Assembly: GCF_000143415.4 (NCBI RefSeq)
Contig: NW_003314303.1
Span: forward strand, 559,043-622,459
DNA length: 63,417 nt
Origin: Selaginella moellendorffii
Lineage: Eukaryota; Plantae; Lycopodiophyta
Reading direction: 5' to 3'
The stretch's first letter is position 1. Each line of letters starts with the position of its first letter. A program made the translations under genes and the position numbers. This document shows, one piece after another, positions 28,724-60,578 of the stretch. The notes beneath the pieces were generated by a model. The model was not told the DNA's origin, searched no databases, and saw nothing but the letters and a program-made list of their open reading frames with translations.

Positions 28724-29690
<967 letters not shown>

Positions 29691-32589: not shown

Positions 32590-32827
32590 AAAAATCCAAA
32601 TCCAACCAGGTGCAAAAGAACAACAGCTGCAAAAGAACGGGCCTTTGTCCACATTGCCCAGCTTCACTAGTGCTCCCTCTAGAACCTCGTAGTTCTCAAT
32701 AAACTTATCATTCTTGGTTGTCTTCACACATGAATCACCAAAAGCTGTAGGATAGATTATATGAAGGATTTGGCACTTTGGAGAGAAAGCCTTCTTGTTG
32801 ATGAAATCAGTCCAAAATGGTGCCATG
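32590..32827 (-). pseudogene. Tau-GST pseudogene, 3' part; it continues at 56096-~56135 beyond the nested insertion
   Basis: FWTDFINKK...KFIENYEVLEGALVKLGNVDKGPFF; 56096-56130 matches the preceding GST segment (CGGAGGAATGC...CAAGAGTGGGCTT). Confidence 0.82.
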
Positions 32828-34516
32828 TATGGTGTGCAATTTGTAAAAGGGTGTGTGTTATTGTGGTATATTTCACTCACAATACAATGTCCATGTGGCA
32901 ATTTTCTATTGGTTCCGCATTAAATGTCATTTGGATGCCTCATGGATGCTGGCTGATGGGTCAATGATATCCCCATAATATGAACAATGTGTTATACATA
33001 GATGCCACATATCATCAAGTTTGACCCCATGACATGGGGATTCATCAGGTCATAGGGTTTAGGAGACACTTCCTTGCCTTAGCACTTTGCTTTAGTGCTT
33101 TATTATTCAACATATTTCTTGGTAGCAGATGTGGAAAGTAACTTGGTTTGCTAATGATTGGTTTCAAATGTTTTTGTGAGCAATGTTGGAAGTGGCTTTG
33201 ATTTACTACTCAATTGCTTTCTATGACTTTCAAGTTCTTACCATGAGTATAGTTCCCTCCCTAGTTTACTTCAATTTTGTGTCACTGAAACTTTTTCTTC
33301 TTCTTTCTTGGAAGACGTGGAGGAAGACGAGGTGGATGGCCTTTCATCCAATTTTAGTGATTCGGACTGTGGTTCTAGTATAGATAGTGACAATGATGCT
33401 CTCTTAGAGGTTTGCTTAGTTTCTAACCTTCTAGATTCATGATTTGCATGTTTCTAAGCCTTCTATAATTTTTTGCAATTGAGGGGATTTAGTAGTCCAG
33501 CTGCATTTGGCACTTGGATGCACTTGAAGCTCCTCGAGACTAAGACTACTGCTTACCTCGCATGCTATCTTAGAATTTCCAAGCTAACACTGTACAAATA
33601 TATGCGGCTTGTCGATCCAAATTGGAGAGGTGTATATTACAGAGTACCACCCAAAGAGGTACTTCATCATGTTTGAACTAACAATGCCATGAATCGAGGT
33701 GGCACAAATTGGGGGATTATTAATTCCTGATCTAGTTATAGAACTGGAGGATACCAGTTTAGCCGACGCTAAATTCGTCAGGCCTTAGCCACTCACAATC
33801 CAAGTAGGCTAGAACAGAGGTACATAACAAGGATTTGATGACGGATTTACAGGAACGAGGAGGCTTATGCACTTTGCCATATGGATTGTGAGTATTCTTT
33901 CATTTCTACTTTTTTGTCAGAACATGTGGTAACATGTTTATTATATGTAAGGAACCAACTCCCCGAGTTGTTGTAAGCTAAAGGATCCCTGAAAGCATGA
34001 CCGAAATAATAAAGAGTTCATCGAATGGGACCGAGTCTGAGATCAAGTCTGAGACTGACTCTAAGACCGAGTTCGAGATAGAGTCTAAGATTGAGTCCGA
34101 GGCCGACTCCAAGACCGAGTTTGAGGCCGAGCTCGAGACCGAGTTCGAGACAGAGTCTAAGATCCGAGATCGGGTCCGAGACCGAGTCTGAGGTCGAGTC
34201 CAAGGTTGAGTCCGAGATCAGGTCCGAGGTCAAGTCCGAGATTGAGTCCGAGTCCGAGATTGGGTCCAAGATCGAGTCTGAGATCAAGTCTGAGATCAAG
34301 TCCGAGACCGAGTCCGAGTACTAATACAGGTCGAGGGGTGAAAGCCCAAAGCGTGAGTCTTCCAAGGGGGAGGGGCTGTGGGGGGTTCCAAAAGTATAGT
34401 AGGGATAGTGAGGTCTAGGAACCAATCTTGAAGGAACTTTCCAGTGATGCTTCCAAACTGACTTGAGGTTGAGACTGGGGCCAAGGGGCTTTGGGTGGGA
34501 GTGAGCATGGACTTGG

Positions 34517-35037
34517 TGTGAGACACAAAATCCCTAGGCCCCAAAGTGGAGCCGGAAAGGGTGCCACATGGTAGTGGCCGAAACGAAAGCCCAAACGAGT
34601 GTAACACATTTGGACTAAAAGCTCTGACTTGGAAGGTCGAGAGCGGGAGTGGAACTCCCAACAAAGTGCTCAAGGAGCGAGCACGAAGCGAGCAATAAGC
34701 AACGCTCTAAAAAGGGACCCAAAAAGGACCAACACATGACACGTGGAAGTGTCCGAGATGGAGTCCGAGATGGACCCGAGATGGAGTCCGAGATGGAGTC
34801 TGAGGTGGACCAAGACGGAGTCTGAGATGGACCCGAGATGGAGTCCGAGATGGACCCGAGATGGAGTCCGAGATGGAGTCTGAGGTGGACCGAGACGGAG
34901 TCCGTGATGGACCCGAGATGGAGTCCGAGATGGACCGAGATGGAGTCCGAGATGGACCGAGACAGAGCCCGAGATGGAGTCCGAGATGGAGTCCGAGAAG
35001 GACCCGAGATGGAGTCCGAGGTCGAGACCGAGACTGG

Positions 35038-35072
<35 letters not shown>

Positions 35073-38000
35073 GGACCGAGACCGGGACCGAGACCGGGAC
35101 CGAGGCCAAGGCTGAGACCGAGCCCGAGCCCGAGTCCGAGTCCGAGTCCGAGTCCGAGTTCGAGTCCGAGTCCGCATTCGAGTCTGAGCCCGAGTTCGAG
35201 TCTGAGAGGGTGAAAGCCCAAAGCGTTCGTCTCCCAGACCCTAGGGGGTTTGGTGAGCTCCAAAAGTATAGTGAGGGGGAGGACTGCAGTGGAGCCAGTT
35301 TGGCTAGAAAAGGCCAGTTTGGCCCAGGAAGGCCAGACCCAGTGTTGGGTGATGAGCTGACCACTGGGAAGTCCAAGACTAGAGTGAACATGAACCGACA
35401 AGCGGGATAGCTTGGTGAAGTGTTCAAGAGCCGGCTTTAGTTCCCCCGGGAGATCGACTGGCCGATGCTCCCAGTCCAAGTGTGGGTGGCACTACCTACT
35501 TGGATACCAGGTGTGGCTCAACGGAACCTCGCTCTAAGCCCATGCCTAGAGCACCTAAAGGCGAAAGGTGGGGAGAGTACCCAGGTGGCTTGCGTAAGGC
35601 CACAGTGTTCCGAAATGTTGTCCCAAAGGCCCAGACTGTGGAAAGGAAGAGGAGCAGTCCTCTGGGGTAGTGACCAAGGACACAGTCGTGTGGTGAGGAA
35701 GTCCCAGAGGACCATGGGACCTAATGGTCGGGCCGGTGGGCCTCGATTCAGTGGTAGTGTTGGTGAACACGGCCGTGGGCAGAAAGGGACTTGGTGGGGA
35801 CCAGAAAAGAAATATTGGGGAAGGCTATTCCCCTTGTCGGTGGGCATCCTAAGGATGCTAAGGAGTGGATCTGGGATGACCACTCATGGATGGTTGGCCC
35901 AGTCTTGGAGAGACAAGATTGTGTTGCAAGTGGTATTGGACTACCAATGCAGCAAAGGTGATTGGGAATAGCCTTAGCGTAACAGGCTGCTATGTCAGTG
36001 GTACCTTTGAGTGTCGGTCATGGGATCGGACACGTGGAGCACTTGGACTAGGTGCAAGGGTTGAGTGGCATGGATGCCATTCTTGGGGCTAGCAAGTCCC
36101 AAGTCCTGAATTGGACTTATGGAGGTTGTGAATGAGACTCCTCCAAGTGGTTAGAGGTGTGGTTAAGTGACTAAAATAGAATGGAAAAATTAGTCGCTTA
36201 CAACTTGGTATCGGAGTTGTTCCTTAGTCCGACTTTTATTGGTGCTCAAGTATATCACCATTGATGTTGGCATTGGAAGGTCCTAGGAGGGGGCCTATCC
36301 TTGAGGAGTAGCATGTCGAGAGGACATGGCTCTCCACTCAAGTTCATGCGTGAACTTGGGCACGATGTGGTGGATAGAAAAGGGCCAATAATAGAACGAC
36401 TTTGGGATCTTGGGAACAGTATAAGGTTTCCTCAGAGAGCTGAGGATGTGATCCAGATGAGCGTTTGACGCAGCAAATGGGCTAACATAGTTGTGGTAAA
36501 CAACTATAATTGGGATCACGGGAAAGATGTAGACTCCAAAATAATAAAGGAGTCACAAGATTACCCTCATATAGTTGAGGCCGGTGCTCATAACTTTGAG
36601 ATTGGAATTGATGACCATGGGAGGTCAAATATATGAGAGGACACAAGTCCTCAAAATGGTAGCTGAGGTTATCCTTGATAAATGTTGGAACAACCCAAGG
36701 AGTTGGGGATGTAATTAAAGGATGAGTTGGTATTCTTATCACATGGACAAGTGGTCCTAAGAGGTAAAAGGTTGCCCCAAGAGAACAAATCAAGTATCGG
36801 AGTAACACTTGCAAATATGGTCCTTGTGAATAAGACCTGAATACAAGAAGTTGTATTCCAGTGAGCTGGCACCTCAAAGGTAGGACCTCATGGGTCGTCA
36901 GATGACAAAGTCCAAAAAGCTGGATGACTCTAGTAGAGTCAAGGAATGATCTTAAAGGATTGATGGAAGCATTTGGACTGAGGTGTGTGGTACCCCACGA
37001 AGGATGGGGGGGATCATAGGATCCAAGGATGAGAACAGAGGGTATCTCATCGATGGCAAAATATCGCACATGTGACTTCGGGTATCGAAAGATACTTGTC
37101 GACCGGTCCTTACGGACACTCTTTCCTTACTGCCATGACGGCAAGAGGTCGGTACTGCTGGTTCCCATCATTGGCCCCTCTTGTCCAAGTGTTAGTAAAC
37201 TGGGCTTAGCATCTGTACTTAGCCAGATGGACATAAGGTAGGAACTCCTATGTGTTTCTAGCTGAGCATTCTCGGCCTGGCTTTTAGTTCTCTTTTGCTC
37301 TGTCTTGCACTGGCTTGGCTAGAACCCTCGCGTATTGAGATTGGTCCCTCAATATCGCTGGATGATAGCTTACCGTGTCTGCCAAACACCCTCGCTATCA
37401 TGCCCTTTGTGTTAGTCTCATTTCGGTCCCAAATGCTATTTATGGAAAGTGTCCAGATTTGCTTATTTGGCATATCTACGGAATGTAGAGATCGGCCTGA
37501 ACACAATGGTGTTCGTCCCGTGTCCAAATTCGCAATCTAAAGACATTCCATATTTAGTAAGTTTTGAGCTTGTCCCAGAGACTAACTCCTGGTACTAAAG
37601 GAGGCTTGGGGTGAAAGCCCAAAGCATGTGTTCCTAAGGGGGGGGGGGGGGCTATGGGGGGTTCCAAATGTATAGTAGGGATAGTGGGTAGGTTGGGTAT
37701 GGCCGACCAACCTGAGGCATAGTCTAGCTCCCGCTTGCGTGCCTGTCCTTGTTCTGCGTCTAGCTTGGGTCTAAGCCCAAGTTCCATTCCATGCTAGTTG
37801 GTGGAGTACCTATATCCTCGCGTTAGGCCACCGGTATGCCAAAATAGCCACAGACTTCGTTTGGCTCCGTTTTGCTTGTTAGTCCTGGCATTGGGATGCT
37901 GGTTGCTCCAGGACTGTTCCAAGTCACTCCGGGCCCCTGTCCCTTTGCTCCTTGGGCTATATGCTCGAGAGTTGCTCCGTGGTTCGGTTCCATCACTCCT

Positions 38001-41000
38001 TGGCTGTATGCTTGGGAGTTTGGCACCGTTCGTTCGTTCAGTGGCCCAAGGCCCTGAACCTCAGGTTCCTATGGACACATGGCAGGTGACACGTGGCATC
38101 TGTCACGTGGCACAAAGAGGGTTTAGGTTCCGCTTTGTGGTGTTATCCTATGGTAGATCACCATAGGATAAAGGGTCAAAACCACGTGCGCGACATTTGG
38201 TATCAGAGGATGAGTATCAGCGAGTACTATCCAATGAGATTGGGCAACTAGTCTCATTGCATACGCAGAGATGAAAATGATGATCCGAGTGGGTACATGT
38301 TTTGGTGGAAAGACTTCACATTGGTTCCTTGGGATAGGTTTTGGGTTACCTTGTTGTACCTTATGATGTGAGCTTGCGCTTGGGCTCATAGGATGGTTTG
38401 GAGATGTTCCGTTTGCACGAGTTTGAGCTTGGGCTCGTGAGTGAGGCGCATTAGCAACTCGAGGTTACACTTTGAGTTGGCAGGATTAATGTAAGCCTAT
38501 CGATGGTTCCAGTGGTTCCGTAAGTTGTTCCATGTACCATGGGTGAAAGCAAACCTCCCTAGATTTGCTATGAGTGGCAAATAGACTGGTCCGTAGCTGT
38601 TTAGCACGGCACTAGTGGATCCTTCCTAGGCATGATTATAAGTGGATCAATCAAGACTGTAGGGAATAGTCTATTGGTTCAAGTAATCATTGCCGTGCTC
38701 TCTCATAAACTTTTCTTCGATTGAACTGAAAGTAGTGCGAAAGCAAGCTTGAGGTTTAGTCAAAGATGAGACCGAAAAGAGAGTCATCGGGGACGGAGGA
38801 TCAAATACGTAAATCATTTTCTCTTCTTGGAGAAATGATTTGCAACGAGGTGTTAACTCATTACTTGTGTTCACATTATGCAATCAAGAGTCCCTACCTT
38901 GATGCATGTTGGAAGTGATGGTCTTACAAGTGGTGAGTTATGGGATGGATAGTGGTGAAACACTAAACCATTTTGTCTAGGCTCGCTATTGGAAGACTTG
39001 GGTTGCAATGCTCAATTCTTTTCCGGGGAACCTTGCTATTGCTCCTTGAGTAGCTTGGTGTTGGATTAGTGTTGAGTTTGGTTAGAAAAAGAGTGGCATG
39101 AGCTTGTCCGTGTTGTGAACAAAAGTTAGTGGTGTTGGGTGTCGTAAACCTCTATTGGTGGAGTGTGGCATTTATGTTGCATTTTGTCAAATCGAATTGG
39201 CATTTGATATTCACATAAACCTTTAAAATAATGACATGGGCATTGCTTATAGTGTTGCTTGATTGACGATCAAGTCATTGTGATTTATATCATATCCATG
39301 TGATAATGAGTAATGTGTTTACAAAGTTGCTTGGATAAACGATGATCAACCCCCAAAGTGGTTGAGGGAGAAGCTAGTCTACTTGCACGAAGTAGCATTG
39401 TAGTAGCTTTGACTAGATTCTCAATGGTGGTCTATTATGCTAAGCTTAAGTTGGTACCTCGTTTCCTTAAGTTTGCCCACTAAGGTGTTGGAAAAGGGTT
39501 ATAGCATTCATTTGCTATAGCTTGTCAGTTGATCCGTTAGCACTTGGAATAGATTGTTGGATGGAGAAGATGTGAAGTTGGGGCATTGACGTCACTAGCA
39601 CTTGTGTTAGTGGAAGTGGCATTGTTATTTCAAGTGATGAGGAATTTTCCTTGGACCTTGATTTTTTTCCATGTCATTTTTCTTGTTAGTGTTTTGGCTT
39701 CACATTGGATCTTGAAGGTGATTGAAGAAGAGTGTTAGTGCAATATGGATATCCGAAGATGTGGTCTCCTTCTCCAATGGCTGATCTGTTGGTCACTTTG
39801 CTGAAAACCATTCCATTTTCGTAAGCCAGTACAAACTAGTGAAGGGGTTGGAGTTGACTTCAGTTAGCTTAGACCCTGATAGGTAGTTTATATGATACGG
39901 CCCGAAAGGGATGCTGACTTTTGGGGCTAAAACAATTGAGTTGGATAGAGTTTAGAGTTGATATAGAAAAGTGGCCGTTGCACTTTTCTCAGAAAGGTGA
40001 CCCTTGTACCTTTCTTTTGTAGCGTTGTCCTTGGTGGCAGGTTGCACCTTGCATTACGTTAGACTCTATGAGAGTAGTGAGCTCTCACTGATCTTGACTT
40101 GGTCTTGGTGGCCCTACGCCTTGGCTGAGGATGGTGATGTCCAATTTAGTTGTTTGAGGTTGCGATGTTGGTACCCGTACTGTAGCTTTGTCTATAAGGA
40201 GGTTGTGTACTAATATGAGTCCATCTCATGGTCTTCACTTTAGTTTCGACTGAGTGTTGATCATGCATAGCTAGCCTCTTCAAGGCATGCTCAGAGCTAA
40301 GTGGCTAAATGTTTTAGTGAGTTTATTGCGGTTGAGTTAGATTCGAGTGGTCATCTAGTTCGTGCTTGTCCATGAACCTTTATCTTGTATTTGAGGTATT
40401 ACGTTCATATTGGATGAGTATATGAGTCGATGATATGAGTTTAGTGTTTGGGTCTTGTGAAGGCAAGTTGAAAAGTGATTGTTAGTTGCTTGGCAATTAG
40501 TGATTGCTTGTAGACTTTGTCAAGGACTTTTGACACTTGCTTTGCTCGATGATGATTTAGCGGTGATGGGCTTGCTTTACCAGATGGTGTTGCGGAGGAT
40601 CGTGTCATTAAGCTGGCATGGTTTTTTTTCCATGTTGGCATATCAATTCCTTTGTCGATATCATTTGGTTACGTTTGGTCTATAGTGTTGGATTTCATTG
40701 AGTCTTGGATGTGGTGATTCACTCCTTGATGATGTGTTATCTGAGTTTTGCTGAAGGATTGGTCTCAGATACTAAGTATAGTATTTTTGACTTTAGTTAG
40801 CTTGGTTGTTGGAAAGCTCCAAGTGGTGATTCACTCTTGCTTTCTTCTAGCTTTGTCCTGGTGTTGATGGCATTGAAGTGATGCCTTGTCGTTGACATTA
40901 TTGAGGTTGAGATTCAAAGTGAAATGAGATGTCTCTCCTTAAGATTGATATTGAGTTTCATTAATCTTAATGAAGATAGTGTTGATGATTTGGCTATGGC

Positions 41001-44000
41001 TTTATGTTATTGGCATTCGAACATTTGCTAGTTAGCAACTATGTTGACGTTCAAATGAACTGAGTGGCAAGTTTGAGTTAGTTGTGTTCTAAACGAGATT
41101 ATTTAGTAGGGGTTGAGCTTTGAGCTTTTCTTTGAAAAGTGATTTAGTCATGGACTATGCTAACTCTACAAGTGGGAGAGTTAGTGATCGATGTTGGAAT
41201 ATTTTGAATCCTTATGGGATTATAAGGACATATATCAATCATTGATGATTCTTCTTGTGCTTGTTATGATGTGAGTTACGTCTTGCTATAGATGGATTCA
41301 TGGAGGATCGTTTGGTGATCACTTGTTGAGCATAACTTTGCTATGCTTAGCTTTTGGATTGATGCAAAAATGCTTTTCATTAGCTTTGGCATTATGGAGT
41401 TTAGCTTATGGATGTGTTGAGGAAGATGTTGTGGGTTGCATCACGATTTCTTCTTTAGCATTGAAGTTAGCTTCTGTGAGACTTGTGATCATTAATAGGC
41501 AAGACTTGGCTATAGGCTTCTTCAAGCTTTTGGTTCTTTGAGTTTTATGCTCATTGTTCCATTTGTTAGAAGTTGTTGGGGAAGGCATTTTGGCTTCTAA
41601 CTTCGATGTTGAAGTTAGTATTTGCATCTAGCCATCATTGGTGATGATTGACTATCATCTAGGATAATTGATTATCCTTGTCAAAAAGTTTTGCTTGATT
41701 ATTGTTAGTATAGAATGGTTTGCCGTTCTTTGGGATGGTGGATTCCTTCTTAGACGATGATTATGCATCTCTTTATTGATGGGATGATTGATGATTTTTT
41801 ATGATGGTTAGTTGTTCTCTTTGATGGCTTATGGCTTTTCGCAATACCACATGTTCTTTGTGGTTTGCTTTGGATTGGTCTCTTGGGTTTGAGACATCAG
41901 TAGGATGTTGCTAACACTTACTTGAGCAACTCTGGTTTCTTGGTATTGTTGATTGAGATCTATTCAGATTTGCTAGTGCAATAGTTGATATGAACAAGTG
42001 TTTGTTTGCTTTGCAAAATTCATTTTGATCTGTTGATTATTGCTTGAGTTAGTTCTAATAGATTCGGATGTTATGGCCTTCGGGTGCAACATTCACGAGC
42101 ATTGTGCTTGTTACTTAATAATACTTTATGTTCTTTGGGTTGTGTTTTGTGAGTTGTTTGGCATACTATCTGCCATTTTCGATAGTTAAGTTTCATCATT
42201 GAGTTTCCTTGATGATCTACTTGCTATTGAATTTTGTTGGATGGTGATTCCTATGTTTACCAATTATGATGATCTTGGTGGTTCCTATCTACAATACTAC
42301 TAGTTTATCGGATGATAACTTGCTTAGAATACTTTTGTGTTCTACTCTAAGATATAATCACTAGTAATTAAGCTTCTTAGATATCATTGTCTCTGACTTT
42401 GATATTGTCCATCCATTAATCTTTGAGTTTGGGCCAGTATAGGCAGACTGGCTTCGGCACTTTGTGTGCATGTTGAAATCTCTAGTCATGGGGTAGCTAC
42501 TGTCGACTGGTCACATAACCCACCTCTTTGTCGATGTTCCTTATTCCGTTGAAAGGGTGTGACCGTGTAAACAACTCTAACTGCCTGTTTACAGTAGTCT
42601 ATCTAAACCTTACCGACGAGTTTGGTTTCTTTGTTTAGGAGGGTTGGGGCCTTTGGCTTCTCTCTCTATGTTCCTGCGGGCAGGGGCATATCACACTTTT
42701 GTAGCTGGGTGACCCCCAGAGCAGCAAGGGTGGCTAACTTCGTTGGTCATTTCCTTGTCGGCGACGGCCGGAAGGTGTCTGAGCTGGTAGCGCATCCTCG
42801 TTAGACAAAGAGGTTGCTCCCTAACTCATTTAAGTTGGTGCATTTCTCACATAGTGTGAGTACCGTGAACTTTTTCTGGAGTTGTTTCCTTGGCGGTATT
42901 CTAGACTGGAGTATGCATCGACGAGGACGTTGATCTTCCCCAAGGGGGGGAGAGTGTCGCGCATGTGACTTCGGGTATCGAAAGATACTTGTCGACCGGT
43001 CCTTACGGACACTCTTTCCTTACTGCCATGACGGCAAGAGGTCGGTACTGCTGGTTCCCATCATTGGCCCCTCTTGTCCAAGTGTTAGTAAACTGGGCTT
43101 AGCATCTGTACTTAGCCAGATGGACATAAGGTAGGAACTCCTATGTGTTTCTAGCTGAGCATTCTCGGCCTGGCTTTTAGTTCTCTTTTGCTCTGTCTTG
43201 CACTGGCTTGGCTAGAACCCTCGCGTATTGAGATTGGTCCCTCAATATTGCTGGATGATAGCTTACCGTGTTTGCCAAACACCCTCGCTATCATGCCCTT
43301 TGTGTTAGTCTCATTTCAGTCCCAAATGCTATTTATGGAAAGTATCCAGATTTACTCATTTGGCATATCTACGGAATGCAGAGATCGGTCTGAACACAAT
43401 GGTGTTCGTCCCATGTCCAAATTCGCAATCTAAGGACATTCCATATTTAGCAAGTTTTGAGTTTGTCCTAGAGACTAACTCCTAATACTAAGGGAGGCTT
43501 GGGGTGAAAGCCCAAAGCATGTGTTCCTCAAGGGGGGGGGGCTATAGGGGGTTCCAAATGTATAGTAGGGATAGTGGGTAGGTCGGGCATGGCCGACCAA
43601 CCTGAGGCATAGTCTAGCTGTCTTTGTTCTGCGTCCAGCTTGGGTCTAAGCCCAAGTTCCATTCCATGCTAGTTGGTGGAGTACCTATATCCTCGCGTTA
43701 GGCCACCGGTATGCCGAAATAGCACCAGACTTCATTTGGCTCCGTTTTGCGTGCTAGTCCTGGCATTGGGATGCTGGTTGCTCCAGGACTGTTCCAAGTC
43801 ACTCCGGGCCCCTGTCCCTTTGCTCCTTGAGGTATATGCTCGAGAGTTGCTCCATGGTTCGGTTCCATCACTCCTTGGCTGTATGCTTGGGAGTTTGGCA
43901 CCGTTCGTTCATTCAGTGGCCCAAGGCCCTGAACCTCAGGTTCCTATGGACACGTGGCATGGACACGTGGCAGGACACGTGGCATCTGTCACGTGGCACA

Positions 44001-47000: not shown

Positions 47001-48900
47001 ATGAGTAGTGGAATTAAGTTAGAGAGGGTGTCTCTAACGGGTTTAGCGAGAACTGAACCAATAAAAAGGAGCAAACCACCCCAGGTGGTCAAGTGAGTCT
47101 CTAAGTTGGAGAGACTATCCTCCTTAGAGGATGGGCAAGGCATGGTGAGCCTTTGGTGTCAAACCATTGACGAACATGGAGAAGGCATGGTGAGCCTTCA
47201 ATGTCAAACCATTGACAAATATTGGCTAGGTGCCAAGGATGGAAATGGTAACACATGCTGGTGTTACTTTATAAAATGGTTTACCGTTCGATGAGGACAT
47301 CGAACTTCGTCTATGGGTGGTGGAGTTGTGAGACACAAAATCCCTAGGCCCCAAAGTGGAGCCGGAAAGGGTGCCACATGGTAGTGGCCGAAACGAAAGC
47401 CCAAACGAGTGTAACACGTTTGGACTAAAAGCTCTGACTTGGAAGGTCGAGAGCGGGAGTGGAACTCCCAACAAAGTGCTCAAGGAGCGAGCACGAAGCG
47501 AGCAATAAGCAACGCTCCAAAAAGGGACCCAAAAAGGACCAACACATGACACGTGGAAGTGTCTGAGATGGAGTCTGAGATGGAGTCCGAGGTGGACCGA
47601 GATGGAGTCCGAGATGGACCGAGATGGAGTCCGAGATGGAGTCCGAGATGGACCGAGACGGAGCCCGAGATGGAGTCCGAGATGGAGTCCGAGAAGGACC
47701 CAAGATGGAGTCCAAGGTCGAGACAGAGACCGGGACCAAGACCGAGACCGAGACCGAGACCGGGACCGGGACCGAGACCGAGACCGGGACCGAGACCGAG
47801 ACCGAGACCGGGACCGAGGCCAAGGCTGAGACCGAGCCCGAGCCCGAGTCCGAGTCCGAGTCCGAGTCCGAGTCCTAGTTCGAGTCCGAGTTTGAGTCTG
47901 AGAGGGTGAAAGCCCAAAGCGTTCGTCTCCCAGACCCTGGGGGGTTTGGTGAGCTCCAAAAGTATAGTGAGGGGGAGGACTGTAGTGGAGCCAGTTTGGC
48001 CAGAAAAGGCCAGTTTGGCCCAGGAAGGCCAGACCCAGTGTTGGGTGATGAGCTGACCACTGGGAAGTCCAAGACTAGAGTGAACATAGACTGACAAGCG
48101 GGGTAGCTTGGTGAAGTGTTCAAGAGCCGGCTCTAGTTCCCCCGGGAGATCGACTGGCCGATGCTCCCAGTCCAAGTGTGGGTGGCACTACCTACTTGGA
48201 TACCAGGTGTGGCTCAACGGAACCTCGCTCTAAGCCCATGGCTAGAGCACATAAAGGCGAAAGGCGGGGAGAGTACCCAGGTGGCTCGCATAAGGCCACG
48301 GTGTTCCGAAATGTTGTCCCAAAGGCCCAGACTGTGAAAAGGAAGAGGAGCAGTCCTCTGGGGTAGTGACCAAGGACACAGTCGTGTGGTGAGGAAGTCC
48401 CAGAGGACCGTGAGACCTAATGGTCGGGCCGGTGGGCAACTCGATTCAGTGGTAGTGTTGGTGAACACAGCCGTGGGCAGAAAGGGACTTGGTGGGGATC
48501 AGAAAAGGGATATTGGGGAAGGCTATTCCCCTTGTCGGTGGGCATCCTAAGGATGCTAAGGAGTGGATCTGGGACGACCACTCATGGATGGTTGGCCCAG
48601 TCTTGGAGAGACAAGACTATGTTGCAAGTGGTATTGGACTACCAATGCAGCAAAGGTGATTGGGCATGGCCTTAGCGTAACAGGCTGCTATGTCAGTGGT
48701 ACCTTTGAGTGTCGGTCATGGGATTGGACACGTGGAGCACTTGGACCAGGTGCAAGGGTTGAGTGGCATGGATGCCATTCTTGGGGCTAGCAAGTCCCAA
48801 GTCCTGAATTGGACTTATGGAGGTTGTGAATGAGACTCCTCCAAGTGGTCGGAGGTGTGGTTAAGTGACTAAAATAGAATAGAAAAATTAGTCGCTTACA
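34517..48900 (+). mobile_element. Non-autonomous LTR retrotransposon B (LTRs 34517-36202 and 47327-48900)
   Basis: TGTGAGAC...CGCTTACA; TSD CTTGG; PBS TGGTATCGGAG at 36206; PPT CTATGGGTGGTGGAGT identical to family A; ~4.1 kb internal region without an intact ORF. Confidence 0.95.
37062..44081 (+). mobile_element. Non-autonomous LTR retrotransposon C (LTRs 37062-38195 and 42955-44081)
   Basis: TSD CAAAA at 37057-37061 and 44082-44086; PBS TGGTATCAGAG at 38198; PPT AAGGGGGGGAGAG at 42942-42954; ~4.76 kb G/T-rich internal region with no long ORF. Confidence 0.95.
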
Positions 48901-50699
48901 CTTGGGTGATGCCGAAGGGGCCACCCCAAGAAGTGCTCAAGAGCAACTCCTGCTCCCAGAAGGGAAATCGACTACGGTGCTCCTAGCTCTTGTGGAGTGG
49001 TGCCCCACTTGAGTACCTTATGGCTCATTAGTCCTTGCCCTTCCTAGGGGCTTGGGCCTTCCCTTTGGGATGGAAGTGGGGGAGTAGGAGTACCTACACC
49101 AGGCCGTTAGGCCATGGTGTTTGCCCCTGGTATCCCGAAGCACGTGCTTCACCCAAGGCTTGGGATTTAGAGGGTCCCATGAACAAGTCTTGTTGTACCA
49201 AGGGATGCAAGGAACTTAGAGGCTTGGTGTGCTTGGTTGCTTATGTCTGTGAAGAGTGTAGCCGAACCTTAAGTCCAATCTAACTCAGGGAGGGGGATTG
49301 GGAGAGATTGGGAATTTGTGGATGGATGGCTAACGCTCCGTTGCTTGTGCAGTGAATAGCTAAAGCCAAGTAGGACCAAGTAGGAATTGGTACAATAGGC
49401 GGCAACCTTGGCGAGGGAACTTAGCTAAGCCCAAAGCAGTGTCGGTTGGTTAGACGAGGTAAGTTGGCAAATTGGAAAAGAAAAATTTATGGCTTACATT
49501 ATACCATATTGCAAGCTTGTAAGCTATGGTTTCTATGTACATACCATTATTTGCGGGGCAACTCATTATATTGTAGCTTGCGAGCTAGCTACCTCCAAAG
49601 AATCCCATGCAATATTCAACACATATGCACAGGCTATTCATCAATTTGGAAGGCCTAAGCGCATCCAGAGCAACAATGCTCCAGAGCATAATGAGGTTGA
49701 GAGGGATATGATCTGCTGTTGGGGTCCTGCAGCTAGGAGCTTCATACGTGGGACATCAATACATAACCAGGTACTCACAACGTTAGAGTTTTTCCAAATA
49801 AGGACTCATAGGACTAAATCAAATTTGTTTTGCAGTGCATAGAGCATTTGTGGAGAGAGCTCTTTGAGTGCGTGGTGTGGTTTTATAAGCACCTTTTTGA
49901 GTCCATGGAAGATATAGGAATTCTCGATGCATCTAATCCATGGCACAACCAAAGTCTATGTTGTGTCTTTGCTCCATACCTCAAGAAGGATATTTCAGAC
50001 TGGTTGCAACCTGAAACCTCCATGAGGTCCATCAGTATCGATGTGGTGATTACTTCAAACCATCTCATGTTCCTACAAACTTATTTCAACTAATGGAACA
50101 AGAGCTTGGGTAAGAATTTTGGTAATGTTACAGAATTCTTGATAAATTGTGCTTTTGTAGGATTATACCAGCTGTTGGTGGAAAAGATATTGAAGACTTT
50201 CCTGGACCATTTCTCTCCAATGTCGAAGGTGCAACTTTATCAGAGGTAATCTTTAGAGCAAGAATAGAATAATTTCTTTAAATCTATTTTGTTATGCTTG
50301 GCTACCTTACAGACTCTTAGCACTATTCGAAACTAGGCATTTTTTATGCATCGGGAGGGACTCAACTTAGATGAGCAATATCTACTTCATTTGGATCTAA
50401 TAATGGAATGTGCAATGGTTGATGTTGTGGTTGTAGATCTACCACTTTACATCGAGAGTGCCTTGCCTACAGCAACACCAATGAAGCGACGAGCTTTGAA
50501 AAAATTATACTTGGCCATACTCAAAGAAAATTGAGTGTTCTTTAGTGTACATTTCAAATTTAAATTCAATTCTTGATTTGTTCAATTTTAGGGTTCCTAT
50601 GTTCGGGATTAGGGTTTACACCAAGTCCCACCAATATTAATTGTGCCTTGGATACAGGGCAATTTCATTTTATGACATGATTTTGTCGATGGTTCGTTT

Positions 50700-53600
50700 G
50701 TTCTTTCAATCAATTCGCGTCATCTAACTGGAGGCAAGGCTTTTAGTGCACACTCCCCCGATCGCAGGACCACCGCCAAGCAAGAGCACCACAGCTGTGA
50801 TGGTGGGTAGCTTCTCCTCAATCAGGTTTGCATAACCAATCCCTTGTGGTTTCTAGGCTTGAAGAAAGAATGCTGCACACCTCAACAGCAGTAAACACTA
50901 TGTAGGAAACACCTCGCGAGCATGCAGCCAAGCACTTGATGTTCCACAATCGGTACAGCCAACAATCCCGTGAGACACACGCCAGCCACTTGATTTTCCA
51001 AGCTCCGCAGCAGGGACATCAACTCCAACAACATCCCATCCACAGCTCCCAACTGCATTTGAGCAAGCAGAGCACCGCCTAATATTGCATACATTGCAAC
51101 ATATGCAGAACCTCCAACATGTTTCGTTCTCCTCGCCTTCCTTGGAAAGTAGCAGCCCGAGCGTTTGAAATGAGCAAGTCCAGACACCTTATGCCCATGG
51201 TGTTGTCCTATCTGAAATGCTGCCACCAACACCAACTACAGGATGTGCTCACAGAACCCCATATAGTGCCACTGCTACCAGCCCTGCAACTCCACCAGCT
51301 GTTACAACTCTCGCAACTCCATCTATCGGTACAAGTGCTAGTACTTGGCCATCTACCTCCCGAAGTAACAAGCAGTCTAGCTCAGTAAGTTTTTCATTTG
51401 TACCCATTTTTTTTTTCCATGTGTTTTTTTGCGTAGGGTGAGTTGACAATGCTGCCACACCAACGAGCTTATAGTTCCCTATCAGTATTCCACAACTACT
51501 CCCAAGGATTGATATTATCATCTAGTGGAGCTTCGACATCCATATATGTTCAAGCTAACCCTCAAGGCAGACTGCCATGTGAGCCACAGGTATAACATAA
51601 CCCCATGCACTCTTCATTTTTTTCTTCTTTGGATTTGTTTAACTCATTTTTGTTTCATTGTGCTAGATTCTCTCACCTCTTGTGGCTGCAGTGCACACCT
51701 ATGCCAATAACAATCGGCAATCTTATCTTGTTGTCGTGGCAGTCGATCCAATGTCATTGGTGGGATGTCATCTACAACACCCTTGGAGCACTTGAGGAAA
51801 AAGATGTTCGTGAATGTAAGTCAATTTTTTTTTTAAGTTCCCTCCTCACAAATATATTTTGTGGTCTTTGCAGTTGTAGTTGTTACAAATACCTTAATTG
51901 CAAATGATGATCCCTTGGTGATAGAGCCATTTCTCCCAAAGCTAGCCACGCAGGAACCAAACCAAAACAAGAATAATGAAGATGAAGACTCTACGGATGA
52001 AGAGGACATTCTTCCATTACTGGAAGAAACTCTCCCCACACAAGACAACATGGACATTACCAAAGTCGAAGAATAAAGTGATGGTGGGGATGAATTGCAC
52101 CAAGGATCTCCAAAGACATCTTTATTACCAAAGATAGTGGCTCCAGGCCATGCGGCCGGTAAGAAGCATTAATATAAATAAATATTTTCTTTATTTTCTA
52201 ATTTCTGAGTGTAGATAGGCCAATGGTAGTGTATGATAGTGATGGCGGAGGCCTTGAGACCATGGTGTGCCTCCACCCCCCTTTCTAGAGGGAAGTAGCT
52301 CTACTCCTCTTACTCTTATGGAGTTGCTTGACAACTTTTCTACAGTAGAGTAAGATAATTGAAAATTGTGCCATTCAAAATTGAACTAACGTTTGCATGT
52401 AGATTGTTGGAGCGTCAATAAAGATGGATTGATACCACCAATGCATTTAATGAAGTTGTTCAGTTAACCACTCAGGATAGTGCCAACTTTATCATGCTGC
52501 AACATGAGGAGGTTTCTACCTTATAGGATGCCACCACAGCCCTTGAGGTGAGGGCACAGGGGGATGCTGAAGTTCTCTCACAGATGCAGTGGCTGAAACA
52601 CAAGCTTCTTAGTTGCTTTGGCGTGGAAGCACAAGTGACGAGGAGATACTAGACATTGTTGTTAGACACCCTGAGTTCCATTGGGCTGGCGGTGAAATAT
52701 TTCTTCGGCACGTGTTTTTCAGCCAAGCCATGCCTCATTGGCAAGATTGGGAGAGTATTTTCCTTAAGCTTGGCCTTTCAAAAGCACAGTGACAACACAA
52801 TCTAACAACTCCTTACTGAAGTAAGTATCAATGTGCCTCCTTCAATTGTTGAGTCCACAATAGCATGGTTCATTGAGAAGAGGTACATATATCTATTTCT
52901 TAGCACTTAGTACCATCTTATGGTTTTGTGCAGGGACCTACGTAGGAATTGGGCCTGCACAAATTCATGCTGAAGAATAAAAATGGGCCTTATTTTTGCA
53001 TCGAGAAGGCCATGCTTTGGCCATACAGACTTGCTCGTACACGTTTGAGGCCGTCTTGCATTCTGGTAAGCAATGGATTGCTTATGAATTGGAGTTCCCT
53101 TACTTGTCCTTCTAGATTGCACCAAACAATGAATTCAGTTGTTTCCAATTCCTTCAACACTAATCTCCGCACAGGAATTACAAATTGGTTTATGCGTCTG
53201 AGATTGGAGGAGCTTTGGTGTGGGAGGAATCCACAATAGATGCAGGTGGGCCACATGCAAAAGCCATTAGGGAGGCTGTTCGCCAGATTCCAAGATCGGT
53301 AAGTCTAATTTTCATTTGGCTCACTAGAGTAACTTTGTGTTACAGATGCGTGGACTGTTTGTGCTTAGGGAAGGAGCTACATATTGGCATCCCAGGATGC
53401 CAATGCATTCTAGGACGTTGCAACAAGAAGAGCGGGATGTGGTAAGTTAAGTTTAAATCACAAGTTTTATATGCTCCTCATTTCTATATGCACAGGCTAT
53501 CTTTGTGGGATGGTTGCTATTCCAAGCATTCAAATGTAATGCATAGGTATCTTGTGGGTGTACAATTGCAACATTGGCAATTGCAACTAGAGAGGTTCCA

Positions 53601-54416
53601 AATGAGAATGACCGACGACTTGCCCGAGGAGGACTATATGAGATGGGCCTCAAGGCATATGCGCTGCATATTTGGAATGCACTCAACCAATTGCGAGGTG
53701 CATCAAGCCTAAAAGAGGAGGGCGATCAGCACAAGTCTGTGGATTCCATCCTAAAGAACTTGCAATTACCAACTACAACGCAGTGCTTGAGTCTAGACTC
53801 ACCGAATTTGGTGAAGGTTATGAGCAGGCTGTGGAGGTATGCGTGGCTGCAGTGGTTTGGCATTAACTATTCATCGAGCCAAATGTAGTGGGAGACTTAC
53901 TCCGAGATGGCTTCCAACACTCAATACGCATGGAAGCTCACCAGAGGCCTTACAAGAGTCTACATTGCTAAGTGGGCTTTCACTCATTGGAACAGATGCT
54001 TTGTTACAGGTCTTCCAGGTAAGGATGATCATTCCTCCCGCGGAGTTCATCAACTGCCTGATCTTTGATCAGGACTTTGGAGAGAACTTTCGCAGCTGGA
54101 TTGTGGACATCATTCGAGGTAACTATTTACTTTCACAAACGACTAAAATTCTTGTATGTTTGAACATTTTATAGATATGAGCTCGAAAGAGTTATCCAAG
54201 TTCCATCACTTTGCAGTTGATTCTCCAGAGTTCCGACCAAGAGAGCCTATTTGGATCCAAGTTGAGAGATAGAGTACATCATCTACTCGATTTCCCAGGT
54301 TCTCCACATACACACAAGAAGTTTTCTTCCCTTTAATATACCCGTCAATGGAGTGGACTAAACACAAGATCCATTGGGCACTCCAAAATCCAGAGAGCTT
54401 GTATGGATTGGGCTGA
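50700..54416 (+). pseudogene. Second transposon gene, multi-exon, ending in a HECT-like ubiquitin-ligase domain
   Basis: EESTIDAGGPHAKAI (~53225) resembles the HECT motif GExxxDxGGPxRE. The C-terminus RFPRFSTYTQEVFFPLIYPSMEWTKHKIHWALQNPESLYGLG* resembles LPxAxTCxNxLxLPxYxS...KLxxAI...FG. Many short GT-AG introns and stops. 5' limit approximate. Confidence 0.68.
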
Positions 54417-56221
54417 TGTTGTGGAAGTAATCTAGAGACTTTCACAATAAAAATAGATAATTGTCTTGAAATATGTTTCAACTTTGAAAGAGACTCTTTC
54501 CAGTTAATTGGCAAAGTTAAAAGTAAGAATATTCAAAATATTCCACAAATGCCCATTATAGGCACTTGCGGCCCTTGTACTCTTTTGGCTTATGCTTGGC
54601 TCACCAAGGGTAATCACTATAACTTCCAAAGAAGCTCCCAATTTAGATTCTTGGTCAAAACTATCAAGCTTGGGTGCTACATGATGCCCATCCTCGCTTG
54701 AGGAACTCTCAACCTGTTTCATGGTAGAACCAAAATCACCCTCTAGGTCTGTGAACTCGTCCTTGCTTGCATCTCAAGCAGTAACATATCCCTCGCTATC
54801 ACTTTCTTCAGCAAGACCTTTCCCCTCGGTGATTGGCACAACATTAGAAGTAGTCTTAGGCTACTTTGTCAGAGGGATTGTTGAGCCTTGAGAGGAGGAG
54901 GCATCATATAGAATCCTCGGTCCTGTCCCCTGTTGGATCTATTGTTGTGCCTCAAAGAAGTCATAGAATCCTCTCTAGTTTGCCATGCCAGGAGGAAACC
55001 CAGAAACTTCAAACATTGCAAAAGGGTTAGACTATATAAGAAACTATCACAAATCTACTCTTATTAAAGTGAGCATGAGCTTCCAATCCTTGAAAACTCC
55101 AGTTCTTCGGCCGCAGCGCACAGCATACATTGGATAGTTTTGCCCCATGCTTGGAAACCCTTTTTACAAATTTCAAAATTTGAAACTATTGTGATTGGAA
55201 AATATTGTAAGTGTCCATTGTCATTGCTCTTCTCACCTAAATGTTATTACATGCAATTACAACTTCTATATTCTCAAATCTCCTTCAGCATGCTCTTCTT
55301 GAGAGAACTCCAGGTCCAATTTGAAATAATTATAATTGGAAAATGTTGAAAGTGTCTATTGTTACCTTGAATGTTACTACATGCAATTGCAACTTCAACA
55401 TTCTCAAATCTCCTTCAATATGCTCATGTTGAGAGAACTCCAAGTCCAAACATCAACACTATGCACCTTTGTGTAGTACACAATTGAAGTATGAGCCCCA
55501 CCAATTAATCAAATTGGTTAGACTTCAACCTACTTTTGAGTCATATGCAAATCTTCTAAGCATCATGGTACAAAACTAAAGTGTTAAGAGAGCTATATTG
55601 GAAATCAATGGCAACGAAAGATAAACTCAATGGGATGCATTAGAGACATGACTCTAGACAATATATATCCATGGCTTTGCAATGGAGCTAGAGGGAGTTC
55701 ACTTATGCTTGCTATGAACACTATGTTAAAAGAGATGTGCCAAAAAAGGATAATTCAGTTCTTTTGCCATGAGCACCAAGAGCAAGATGTGAGAACATAC
55801 TGCTCTAAATAAGCAATTTAGTCGATTGTCTATTTGATTTGCAACATTAACAACTTGGTAGAATGCATGGGATGAATGGGTCTATGGGCCATGAATGGCT
55901 CCATTCCATACATAGCATGGGTCATTTCTATGGGCATGATGCCCCATCTGGGGCATAAGGATTGGATATTCGTAAAATATTCTATGCTTGTGTTTTTTCA
56001 CACTCATAATACACGTGGCCCAATAGCAAGCATACACATGGTGTGAGTGAAATCCACCTTTATAAAATCCACCCTTTTACGAATTGCACGCCATACCATG
56101 CACGGAGGAATGCAAGAGTGGGCTTATTTCGTATGTGAATTTCCGAGAAGGCAGACGGACTTAGAGATACCACGTAAAAGAATATTCTAATAAAATTAAG
56201 CGTATGCTTTTTTCCTCTCAA

Positions 56222-56950: not shown

Positions 56951-57089
56951 GGATCCGGAATGGATTGGAAAATGAGATCTCGAGAGAACAGTAGAATTCT
57001 AGAATGCGATCAATCCAAACACTAGTGAAATTGTCATTATATTACATTAGATACCTCCAACTTTTTCTTGTTATTAATGCAAAGGCTCT

Positions 57090-60443: not shown

Positions 60444-60578
60444 ATTGTCAATGCAATTTCTCTCGAGTTCTACGAAGAAGAAAGAACGAACCTGAAGCGC
60501 TATATTTTGGTGGAGTAGGCCAGCTGACACACCGAAGCCCGTTCCTCGCCCTTCCACGTTGGCTTTTTCCGGAAAGAA

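What the first reader, a model, noticed from the sequence alone, without database searches (positions are those of the whole stretch)
32828..56095. Hidden IS3EU-like DNA transposon carrying a HECT-like E3 ligase gene in a land plant
The element is only visible after removing 15.6 kb of nested LTRs. It has TAT...ATA termini, ~50-bp TIRs, an intron-containing IS3-type transposase and a second gene ending in a HECT-like domain. An aromatic residue sits at position -4, and the putative catalytic Cys codon reads TAC, one transition from TGC. To my knowledge IS3EU is described mainly from animals and fungi, with TAY..RTA ends and 6-bp TSDs. The TSD here reads as 5 bp (CCATG), so this may be a distinct plant lineage. 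A TE-encoded ubiquitin ligase could be a counter-defence or self-regulation factor.
Basis: partly seen in the sequence, partly recalled or inferred. Interest (0 to 1): 0.8.

Follow-up and report, generated by a model that had tools for sequence, protein, structure and literature searches.

The report
Dead GingerRoot transposon with HECT-like gene
This is a long-dead copy, split by later retrotransposon insertions, of a known kind of spikemoss jumping gene (GingerRoot/IS3EU); the family also carries a very divergent ubiquitin-ligase-like (HECT) gene and a small RNA:DNA-hybrid-binding gene, which I found in no searchable paper.

Summary
The window is Selaginella moellendorffii scaffold GL377607.1. 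At 32828-56095 lies a 7.7-kb DNA transposon with about 54-bp inverted ends (TATGG..CCATA) and a 5-bp duplication (CCATG). It is split by a 15.55-kb nest of LTR elements (33946-49499) and sits in a glutathione-transferase pseudogene.

- **Transposase:** it hits Pfam rva_4. By eye, about half of its core residues match the published GingerRoot SL_GR-020. IS3EU-type elements in a land plant are therefore already known (Cerbin 2019).
- **Second gene:** it is a real family gene. One copy in the same genome (L005) keeps an open 747-codon, 10-exon version. Its C-terminus hits Pfam HECT at E=2e-4, below the curated cut-off. In the ESM Atlas, 29 of 30 nearest clusters are HECT, and its model matches HECT ligases at TM 0.53-0.61. 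The catalytic Cys is present in two other copies and reads TAC here.
- **Duplication length:** three independent insertions have perfect 5-bp duplications, not the usual 6.
- **State:** this copy is dead and function is inferred only.

The scan found this family before on other DNA of this genome (at least nine notes).

The parts
32823..32827 (.). Left copy of the 5-bp target-site duplication, CCATG
   Evidence: The GST paralogue empty-site alignment fits a 5-bp duplication.
32828..32881 (+). Left terminal inverted repeat, about 54 bp, starting TATGG
33045..33945 (+). Transposase gene remnant, 5' part. It holds an acidic N-terminus, a weak HTH-like stretch (33575-33604) and the first catalytic Asp in CHMD (33875-33886).
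   Evidence: Collinear with copies L001 and L005. Coordinates. The HTH_22 hit is only E=0.074. The start is approximate, mapped from the L005 gene model.
33946..49499 (+). Nested LTR block that is not part of the element. A solo-LTR-like shell (33946-34516 and 48907-49499, duplication TTATA) holds an LTR element at 34517-48901 (LTRs 34517-36202 and 47327-48901, duplication CTTGG). That element holds a 1.13-kb repeat pair at 37064-38195 / 42957-44081.
   Evidence: No ORF of 150 aa or more lies between the repeats.
49505..51400 (+). Transposase gene remnant, 3' part. The DDE core pieces are 49480-49839 and 49818-50090. The second catalytic Asp is mutated to Asn (IQSNN, 49663-49677). The catalytic Glu lies in IEHLWRE (49839-49859). 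A Pro/Ser/Thr-rich tail follows.
   Evidence: Pfam rva_4 at 1.5e-13 and 9.5e-11. P0001 is 67% identical. Comparison with GingerRoot SL_GR-020. Coordinates. The 3' limit is approximate.
51786..54416 (+). Second gene (ORF2) remnant. A 481-bp deletion at 51785/51786 removed its start and upstream DNA. It has 8 in-frame stops (52074, 52419, 52524, 52803, 52971, 53544, 53864, 54270) and several frameshifts. The annotated model SELMODRAFT_419359 (P0004) covers 52504-54272.
   Evidence: Exon map of the intact paralogue P0007 on L005, projected onto the window. P0004 locus.
53215..54416 (+). HECT-like domain of ORF2, equal to P0007 residues 400-747. The catalytic-Cys codon is TAC at 54309-54311 and Tyr sits at -4 (54402-54404).
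   Evidence: Pfam HECT E=2.2e-4 on P0007 and 4e-4 on the L005 last exon. ESM Atlas result. Codon states.
54564..55130 (-). Third gene remnant, converging on ORF2. It starts MYAVRCGRRTGVFKDW (55110-55130), which is the first half of an RNase H1 N-terminal (hybrid-binding, Cauli_VI) domain, followed by a Ser/acidic-rich tail.
   Evidence: Pfam PF01693 on window:55050-55163(-) at E=3.2e-5, 24.5 bits, above the cut-off of 21. A 151-aa gene model sits at the same place in L007. The 3' limit is approximate.
55177..55449 (.). Tandem duplication of about 130 bp upstream of the third gene. It is present in five of the six other copies aligned (L004 has one unit fewer).
   Evidence: (D15).
56042..56095 (-). 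Right terminal inverted repeat, ending CCATA
56096..56100 (.). Right copy of the 5-bp target-site duplication, CCATG
32584..32827 (-). Downstream part of the tau-class GST pseudogene split by the insertion. The upstream part lies at about 56101-56160 (-).
   Evidence: The neighbouring GST genes carry GST_N Pfam hits.

Best explanation
**Shown**
- Positions 32828-56095 hold one dead copy of a multi-copy GingerRoot/IS3EU-type cut-and-paste DNA transposon of Selaginella moellendorffii.
- The element is 7.7 kb without the later LTR nest. It inserted into a GST pseudogene and made a 5-bp duplication.
- The family has three genes:
  - an intron-containing DDE transposase of the GingerRoot clade (plus strand);
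  - a roughly 747-aa protein whose last ~350 residues form a very divergent HECT-like domain, with the Cys and a -4 aromatic residue in the canonical places (plus strand);
  - a small protein starting with an RNase H1 N-terminal hybrid-binding domain (minus strand).
- In this copy all three genes are ruined, mostly by C>T/G>A changes. The second catalytic Asp reads Asn, the HECT Cys reads Tyr, ORF2 has 8 stops, and its start is deleted.

**Inferred**
- In active master copies the transposase bound the TATGG...-type ends and moved the element by cut-and-paste, with cuts staggered by 5 bp.
- The HECT-like protein worked as an element-encoded ubiquitin ligase, and its unassigned N-terminal half chose the substrate.
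- My preferred reading, at about 35-40%, is that it acted with the hybrid/dsRNA-binding protein against host silencing or restriction. This is by analogy with TET/JBP genes in fungal IS3EU, VANC in VANDAL elements, polerovirus P0 and caulimovirus P6.
- A role in transposase turnover or transpososome removal comes second, at about 20-25%.
For: - **Genome:** locus L010 (GL377607.1:608546-616314) is an exact substring of the window.
- **Ends, duplication and empty site:**
- **Other copies:** eight further loci of the same genome hold copies 74-96% identical to the reference copy over the aligned stretches.
- **5-bp duplications:** perfect in the window (CCATG), L005 (GCTCA) and L007 (TTTTT). The sixth base never matches.
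- **Transposase:** Pfam rva_4 at 1.5e-13 and 9.5e-11. The core matches the printed GingerRoot SL_GR-020 sequence in about half of its positions, by eye: HMDSY.KL..YGF..H.II.GAT..IVAC...EHN...HNQ.IEH.WR.
- **Terminal motif:** the ends fit the TAYGG..CCRTA motif reported for fungal IS3EU.
- **ORF2 structure:** P0007 on L005 is an open 747-codon model with 10 exons and 36-57-nt GT..AG introns.
- **HECT sequence match:** Pfam HECT E=2.2e-4, protein 656-741 against model 213-301 of 306. The unspliced last exon alone gives E=4e-4. HECT was the one family named in advance among the 24,736 scanned.
- **HECT by other methods:** in the ESM Atlas, 29 of 30 nearest clusters are HECT (top score 0.96, 201 of 256 features). 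The Atlas model matches HECT ligases at TM 0.53-0.61 over residues 401-747.
- **Catalytic Cys:** present in L005 and L001.
- **Third gene:** Pfam Cauli_VI above its cut-off in the window and in L005.
- **Decay pattern:** copies lie 3-8% from consensus, mostly by C>T/G>A.
- **Precedent:** accessory genes in IS3EU, including one in the opposite orientation, are described in PMC12730594.
Against: - The HECT score (21.4 bits) is below Pfam's gathering score (23.9).
- No piece of this window's copy hits HECT even at E<=10.
- phmmer of a 181-aa stretch of the HECT-like region (P0007 501-668) against 1.84 billion representatives found only 13 Selaginella-type copies and no canonical HECT protein.
- PDB sequence searches found nothing.
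- My two AlphaFold models were poor (pLDDT 45) and gave no fold match.
- There is no sign of purifying selection among copies. Omega is 0.57, against 0.40 and 0.69 in shifted frames.
- All copies but one were retrieved through ORF2 itself, so 'every copy has it' is biased.
- The duplication is 5 bp, not the 6 bp typical of the superfamily.
- Any function is inference. No expression or activity data were available.
Confidence: 0.8

Rival explanations
1. ORF2 is a transposon-specific protein that is not related to HECT ligases, and the resemblance is a sub-threshold coincidence.
For: - The Pfam score is below the curated cut-off.
- No HECT protein appeared among the 13 hits of the exhaustive search.
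- PDB searches gave no hit.
- My own models were uninformative.
Against: - HECT was the single family named in advance, yet it is the only Pfam hit at E below 1e-3 on ORF2.
- The match is collinear with the extreme C-terminus of both the model and the protein.
- Cys lies 34 residues from the end and an aromatic residue sits at -4.
- An independent method (ESM Atlas features and its own model) returns HECT for 29 of 30 neighbours and for all 8 structure rows listed, over both lobes.
Confidence: 0.1
2. ORF2 is a passenger: a host gene piece picked up by the element, as GingerRoot often does, with no role for the transposon.
For: - 22 of 77 intact GingerRoot elements in S. lepidophylla carry host gene fragments (PMC6839031).
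- No purifying-selection signal was seen among copies.
Against: - It is a whole gene with its own start, 10 exons and a natural HECT C-terminus, not a fragment.
- It sits at the same place in every copy examined.
- No host parent or any other relative exists at E<=1e-3 among 1.84 billion representatives, so it is not a recent capture.
- The lack of a selection signal is expected when copies decay independently after one burst.
Confidence: 0.12
3. The HECT-like protein serves transposition itself rather than counter-defence. It could clear or degrade the transposase or strand-transfer complex, or limit transposase dosage.
For: Inference only. Integrase-type transpososomes are very stable, and other systems need dedicated factors to remove them. 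Nothing tells this apart from counter-defence.
Against: - IS3EU/GingerRoot families are described with a transposase alone or with other cargo (TET/JBP, alpha-kinase), so a ligase does not appear to be required for the mechanism (PMC6839031, PMC12730594).
- Pairing with a hybrid/dsRNA-binding domain protein fits a silencing-related role better.
Confidence: 0.22
4. The element belongs to another integrase-related superfamily such as Ginger2/TDD, which makes 4-5-bp duplications.
For: The 5-bp duplication equals the Ginger2 range quoted in PMC10045372.
Against: - The termini are TA..TA (TATGG..CCATA), not TG..CA.
- Pfam rva_4 scores higher than rve (51 against 30 bits).
- The core is about half identical to GingerRoot SL_GR-020.
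Confidence: 0.03

Closest known systems
GingerRoot elements of Selaginella lepidophylla (Cerbin et al. 2019, PMC6839031), which form one lineage with Repbase IS3EU (PMC10045372)
   Same: - Same host genus.
- Cut-and-paste element with inverted ends and TA..TA termini.
- Integrase-related DDE transposase. The core is about half identical to SL_GR-020.
- Size falls within the 3.9-12.9 kb range.
- Copies are old and inactive.
   Different: - The duplication is 5 bp instead of 6 (rarely 7-8).
- The inverted ends are about 54 bp instead of 100-150.
- That paper reports only captured gene fragments and does not mention a HECT or ubiquitin gene (0 occurrences) or a hybrid-binding gene.
Fungal IS3EU families carrying TET/JBP dioxygenase and alpha-kinase genes (Kojima 2025, PMC12730594)
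   Same: - Same terminal motif, TAYGG..CCRTA, and inverted ends over 30 bp.
- Same three-gene layout: a transposase, a cargo enzyme gene that is in the same orientation in three of those families, and a further gene in the opposite orientation.
- The cargo is interpreted there as anti-silencing.
   Different: - The cargo here is a HECT-like ligase and an RNase H1 N-terminal-domain protein.
- The duplication is 5 bp against 6.
- The host is a plant, not a fungus.
Canonical HECT E3 ubiquitin ligases (Pfam PF00632; E6AP, NEDD4, HERC and plant UPL families)
   Same: - A C-terminal domain of about 350 residues.
- Cys about 33 residues from the C-terminus and an aromatic residue at -4.
- The predicted model superposes on both lobes (TM 0.53-0.61).
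   Different: - It is extremely divergent: below the Pfam cut-off and invisible to phmmer.
- It is encoded inside a transposon.
- Its N-terminal half has no recognisable substrate-binding domain.
- Tyr replaces Phe at -4.
RNase H1 N-terminal / caulimovirus P6 hybrid-binding domain (Pfam PF01693, Cauli_VI)
   Same: The YAVxxGRxxGVFxxW start of the domain scores above the Pfam cut-off.
   Different: - Only the first half of the 44-residue model is matched. The rest lies across an intron or is too divergent.
- There is no RNase H catalytic domain.

Membership tests
IS3EU/GingerRoot superfamily | DDE transposase that groups with IS3EU/GingerRoot cores | tested here: met
   Pfam rva_4 at 1.5e-13 and 9.5e-11, scoring higher than rve. 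About half of ~105 core positions are identical, by eye, to GingerRoot SL_GR-020 as printed in Data S3 of PMC10045372. No tree was built.
IS3EU/GingerRoot superfamily | Terminal inverted repeats with TA..TA ends (TAYGG..CCRTA in fungal IS3EU) | tested here: met
   TATGG..CCATA, about 54-bp repeats, the same in all copies. Motif taken from PMC12730594.
IS3EU/GingerRoot superfamily | 6-bp target-site duplication. The papers call this 'usually' or 'mostly' 6 bp, so it is typical rather than strictly defining. | tested here: not met
   Perfect 5-bp duplications at three independent insertions (CCATG, GCTCA, TTTTT), and the sixth base never matches. The paralogue empty site fits 5 bp. For this reason I file it as a variant.
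IS3EU/GingerRoot superfamily | No HHCC zinc finger, YPYY or GPY motif around the DDE core | tested here: inconclusive
   No zinc-finger family was hit by the two N-terminal pieces scanned, and there was only a weak HTH_22 hit. The decayed, intron-split N-terminus was not examined motif by motif.
HECT ubiquitin ligase (PF00632) | Sequence match at Pfam's curated gathering score | tested here: not met
   P0007 scores 21.4 bits against a cut-off of 23.9, E=2.2e-4. The L005 last exon scores 20.5 bits. The window's and L001's pieces give no hit.
HECT ubiquitin ligase (PF00632) | Two-lobed HECT fold | tested here: inconclusive
   The ESM Atlas's own model of P0007 matches HECT ligases at TM 0.53-0.61 over 281-297 residues, and 29 of 30 feature neighbours are HECT. 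That model is of modest quality (pTM 0.48). My AlphaFold models failed, at pLDDT 45.
HECT ubiquitin ligase (PF00632) | Catalytic Cys about 32-35 residues from the C-terminus and an aromatic residue at -4 | tested here: met
   In P0007/L005, Cys713 of 747 lies 34 residues from the end and Tyr744 is at -4. L001 also has Cys. The window copy has Tyr (TAC) at the Cys position. The spacing in canonical HECTs is from my own knowledge.
HECT ubiquitin ligase (PF00632) | E2-dependent ubiquitin thioester formation | not testable with these tools
   This needs a biochemical assay.
RNase H1 N-terminal / Cauli_VI domain (PF01693) | Sequence match at Pfam's gathering score | tested here: met
   window:55050-55163(-) scores 24.5 bits and L005 25.6 bits, against a cut-off of 21. 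Only model positions 2-20 of 44 are matched. L007 scores 20.2 bits.
Ginger2/TDD | TG..CA termini with a 4-5-bp duplication | tested here: not met
   The termini are TA..TA. Only the duplication length agrees.
Pack-type capture of a host gene fragment | A recognisable host parent gene, with a fragment rather than a whole gene inside the element | tested here: not met
   All 13 hits of the exhaustive search are element copies. ORF2 is a complete 10-exon gene.

The most novel reading that the evidence does not exclude
Active ancestors of this GingerRoot family carried a two-protein counter-silencing kit. A HECT-type E3 ligase would mark a host silencing or restriction factor for degradation, and a hybrid/dsRNA-binding protein would work alongside it. 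To my knowledge and in the papers I could search, that would be the first ubiquitin ligase of the HECT class encoded by a transposon.
Probability: 0.3. Interest if true: 0.8.

Novelty: new variant of a known kind. Interest (0 to 1): 0.5.

Why it matters
Transposons are known to fight host silencing with their own proteins, such as VANC in Arabidopsis VANDAL elements and TET/JBP dioxygenases in fungal transposons. Viruses usually hijack host ubiquitin ligases rather than encode one of the HECT class. A DNA transposon with its own HECT-like ligase and a hybrid-binding protein would add a new kind of cargo. It would also give a testable handle on which host factors limited transposition in early vascular plants.

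The 5-bp duplication shows that duplication length varies within IS3EU/GingerRoot, which matters for automated classification. For genome annotation, at least 14 S. moellendorffii 'hypothetical protein' models returned here (for example SELMODRAFT_419359, 421051 and 421052) are pieces of these transposon genes.

Tried and rejected
- **Pfam on single exon pieces:** scans of the window and L001 for HECT gave nothing even at E<=10.
- **PDB sequence searches:** four searches (last-exon piece, 181-aa piece, P0007:400-747, and a profile of the C-lobe copies) gave no HECT hit.
- **Word search:** the window's 116-aa piece gave nothing.
- **Exhaustive search:** a 181-aa stretch of the HECT-like region (P0007 501-668) found only element copies, with no distant relatives and no other taxa.
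- **AlphaFold2:** P0007:360-747 and P0007:622-747, run with shallow alignments of near-identical copies, gave pLDDT 45. Foldseek against PDB and the VIA wide search then gave only noise. These results are uninformative, not negative.
- **Metagenome scan for ORF2 relatives:** The second found nothing.
- **Selection test:** a codon-position and dN/dS test among seven copies showed no signal beyond shifted-frame controls.
- **N-terminal half of ORF2:** the ESM Atlas gave no informative neighbour.
- **Third gene:** my first Pfam scans of the 3' region missed it because I used the wrong reading-frame pieces. It appeared once the frame holding MYAVRCG was scanned.
- **Literature on Pfam rva_4:** nothing found.
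- **Untested lead:** earlier notes claim that HECT genes accompany IS3EU transposases in other organisms.
- I searched no self-joined spliced model of the window's ORF2. Searches used single exons by reference or database gene models.


Full report
**What is there**

The window is Selaginella moellendorffii. Locus L010 (GCA_000143415.2, scaffold GL377607.1:608546-616314) is an exact substring of the window at 49504-57272. The annotated model SELMODRAFT_419359 (P0004) is made of this window's own ORF2 pieces.

An inverted repeat joins 32820-32881 to 56042-56103. The 26-nt end motif TATGGYRTGCAATTYRTAAAAGGGTG occurs only at those two places, against 0 expected by chance. The element reads TATGG...CCATA and is flanked on both sides by CCATG. 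The inverted ends are about 54 bp, in two conserved blocks.

**The nest**

The element is interrupted at 33945/33946 by 15,554 bp that start TG and end CA. This block is flanked by TTATA at 33941-33945 and 49500-49504.

- The outer 0.57 kb and 0.59 kb form a solo-LTR-like shell.
- Inside it sits an LTR element at 34517-48901, with 1.6-1.7-kb LTRs that are 97-98% alike and a CTTGG duplication.
- Inside that is another 1.13-kb repeat pair.
- No ORF of 150 aa or more lies between the repeats.

With the block removed the element is 7,710 bp. It aligns without a break at that junction to other copies.

**Insertion site**

The flanks belong to a tandem array of tau-class GST genes on the minus strand. 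The element sits inside a truncated GST copy. Joining the flanks and removing one CATGG gives ...AFLRAWHH-FWTDFI..., which aligns to the paralogue's ...[14 protein letters not shown]... with one unrelated 1-bp deletion. This is an independent empty-site test and it fits a 5-bp duplication.

**Family and duplication length**

The transposase piece 49480-49839 found SELMODRAFT_421051 (67% identity). Its locus L001 holds a whole copy. ORF2 searches brought in eight more loci with copies (L002-L009). Over their aligned stretches the nine loci are 74-96% identical to the reference copy used, which was the window for L001-L005 and L005 for L006-L009.

Three independent insertions have both ends and perfect 5-bp duplications: the window (CCATG), L005 (GCTCA) and L007 (TTTTT). 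In none does a sixth base match. L001 and L002 share their flanks, so they are one old insertion later copied together with a 2.9-kb spacer. That insertion has an imperfect 5-mer.

**Transposase**

Two pieces hit Pfam rva_4 (PF24764) at 1.5e-13 and 9.5e-11, covering consecutive model positions 17-105 and 103-161 in different frames. The same frame change appears in copy L005, which fits an intron.

IS3EU and GingerRoot form one lineage with 99% bootstrap support (PMC10045372). GingerRoot was described in S. lepidophylla and found in lycophytes and bryophytes (PMC6839031). The core of GingerRoot SL_GR-020, printed in Data S3 of PMC10045372, matches ours in about half of ~105 positions by eye: HMDSY.KL..YGF..H.II.GAT..IVAC ... 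EHN ... HNQ.IEH.WR. The animal IS3EU cores printed there look much less alike.

The ends fit the TAYGG..CCRTA motif reported for fungal IS3EU. In this copy the second catalytic Asp reads Asn (IQSNN against IRSDN).

**Second gene**

The exhaustive search returned P0007 (747 aa), encoded on L005. It maps to 10 exons with 36-57-nt GT..AG introns and no stop. The HECT evidence is as follows.

- P0007 hits Pfam HECT at E=2.2e-4 and 21.4 bits, with residues 656-741 against model positions 213-301 of 306.
- The unspliced last exon of L005 alone gives E=4e-4.
- The score is below the gathering score of 23.9. However, HECT was the one family named beforehand, and the E-value is quoted for all 24,736 models.
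- The ESM Atlas gives HECT for 29 of 30 nearest clusters (0.96, 201 of 256 features). Its own model of this protein superposes on HERC, HACE1, HECTD3, NEDD4-like and plant UPL5-like ligases at TM 0.53-0.61 over residues 401-747, which covers both lobes.
- Cys713 lies 34 residues from the end and Tyr744 is at -4.
- L001 also has the Cys.

In the window the Cys codon is TAC (54309-54311). There are 8 stops and several frameshifts, and a 481-bp deletion at 51785/51786 removed the start. The N-terminal half has no recognisable domain.

**Limits of the HECT claim**

- phmmer with a 181-aa stretch of the HECT-like region (P0007 501-668) against 1.84 billion representatives found only 13 proteins, all 61-98% identical, and no canonical HECT. 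Ten of them carry or map to S. moellendorffii records; the other three were not traced.
- PDB sequence searches were empty.
- My two AlphaFold models were poor and their fold searches gave noise.
- Homology therefore rests on one sub-threshold profile hit plus one language-model and predicted-structure source. I put it at about 0.9.

**Third gene**

Earlier notes of this scan mention a small RNA:DNA-hybrid-binding gene, so I tested for it here. On the minus strand, window:55050-55163 reads ...MYAVRCGRRTGVFKDW... It hits Pfam Cauli_VI (RNase H1 N-terminal domain) at E=3.2e-5 and 24.5 bits, above the cut-off of 21. L005 scores 25.6 bits. Only the first half of the domain is matched. L007 has a 151-aa gene model at this place. 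The gene converges on ORF2.

**State of the family**

Copies lie 3.1% (L005) to 8% from their consensus. In the decayed copies the changes are overwhelmingly C>T/G>A, for example 145 of 179 in L001. This is the expected mark of methylated, silenced DNA. dN/dS among copies (0.57) is no lower than in shifted frames (0.40 and 0.69), so the copies decayed independently after a burst. This neither supports nor refutes past selection.

**Novelty**

No paper in the library combines HECT with IS3EU or GingerRoot. The GingerRoot paper has no occurrence of 'HECT' or 'ubiquitin' and reports only captured gene fragments. Fungal IS3EU families with TET/JBP and alpha-kinase genes are a precedent for accessory genes and for a similar three-gene layout.

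The transposon superfamily in a land plant is therefore known. The 5-bp duplication, the HECT-like gene and the hybrid-binding gene make this a new variant. The same family was reported at least nine times before by this scan on other DNA of this genome. One of those follow-ups denied the HECT similarity, and my tests disagree with it.

**Method notes**

I did not search with a self-joined spliced model of the window's ORF2. Searches used single exons by reference or database gene models. Exons were joined only inside scripts, for codon statistics. Nothing in the window looks human.

Noticed in passing
window 28724-29627, 31077-31813, 56222-56950, 57090-57768 (minus strand): A tandem array of at least four tau-class glutathione S-transferase genes. 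The transposon sits in a fifth, truncated copy of the array.
   Followed up: partly
L001:12624-14488 and L003:7755-9505; window 34517-36202 and 47327-48901: Solo LTRs of the same family that is nested in the window's copy are inserted in two other GingerRoot copies. They lie 18 bp apart, in opposite orientations, just upstream of ORF2. This could be a local insertion hot spot or chance from an abundant family.
   Followed up: partly
L001:5979-8992 and L002:13383-16317: The right end of one copy and the left end of the next are separated by the same 2.9-kb spacer, with the same flanks. One old insertion was therefore amplified together with its surroundings as a tandem or segmental repeat.
   Followed up: partly
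window 34024-35231 and 47528-47939: Long arrays of a 12-bp unit (GAGATGGAGTCC-like) lie inside the LTRs of the nested retrotransposon.
   Followed up: no
window 27965-28630 (minus strand) and 26069-27691 (plus strand): An ORF with an FCP1/NIF-type phosphatase signature (DMDNTLIH) lies next to a 540-aa ORF of unknown kind. Earlier notes of the scan describe ParB-like/FCP1 cargo transposons elsewhere in this window.
   Followed up: no
window 58984-60557 (minus strand): Two adjacent ORFs that look like a UDP-glycosyltransferase gene (HCGWNS motif), apparently an ordinary host gene.
   Followed up: no
window 55177-55449 and the same place in the other copies: A tandem duplication of about 130 bp upstream of the third gene is shared by five of the six other copies aligned (one unit fewer in L004). 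It is probably a family feature rather than decay.
   Followed up: partly
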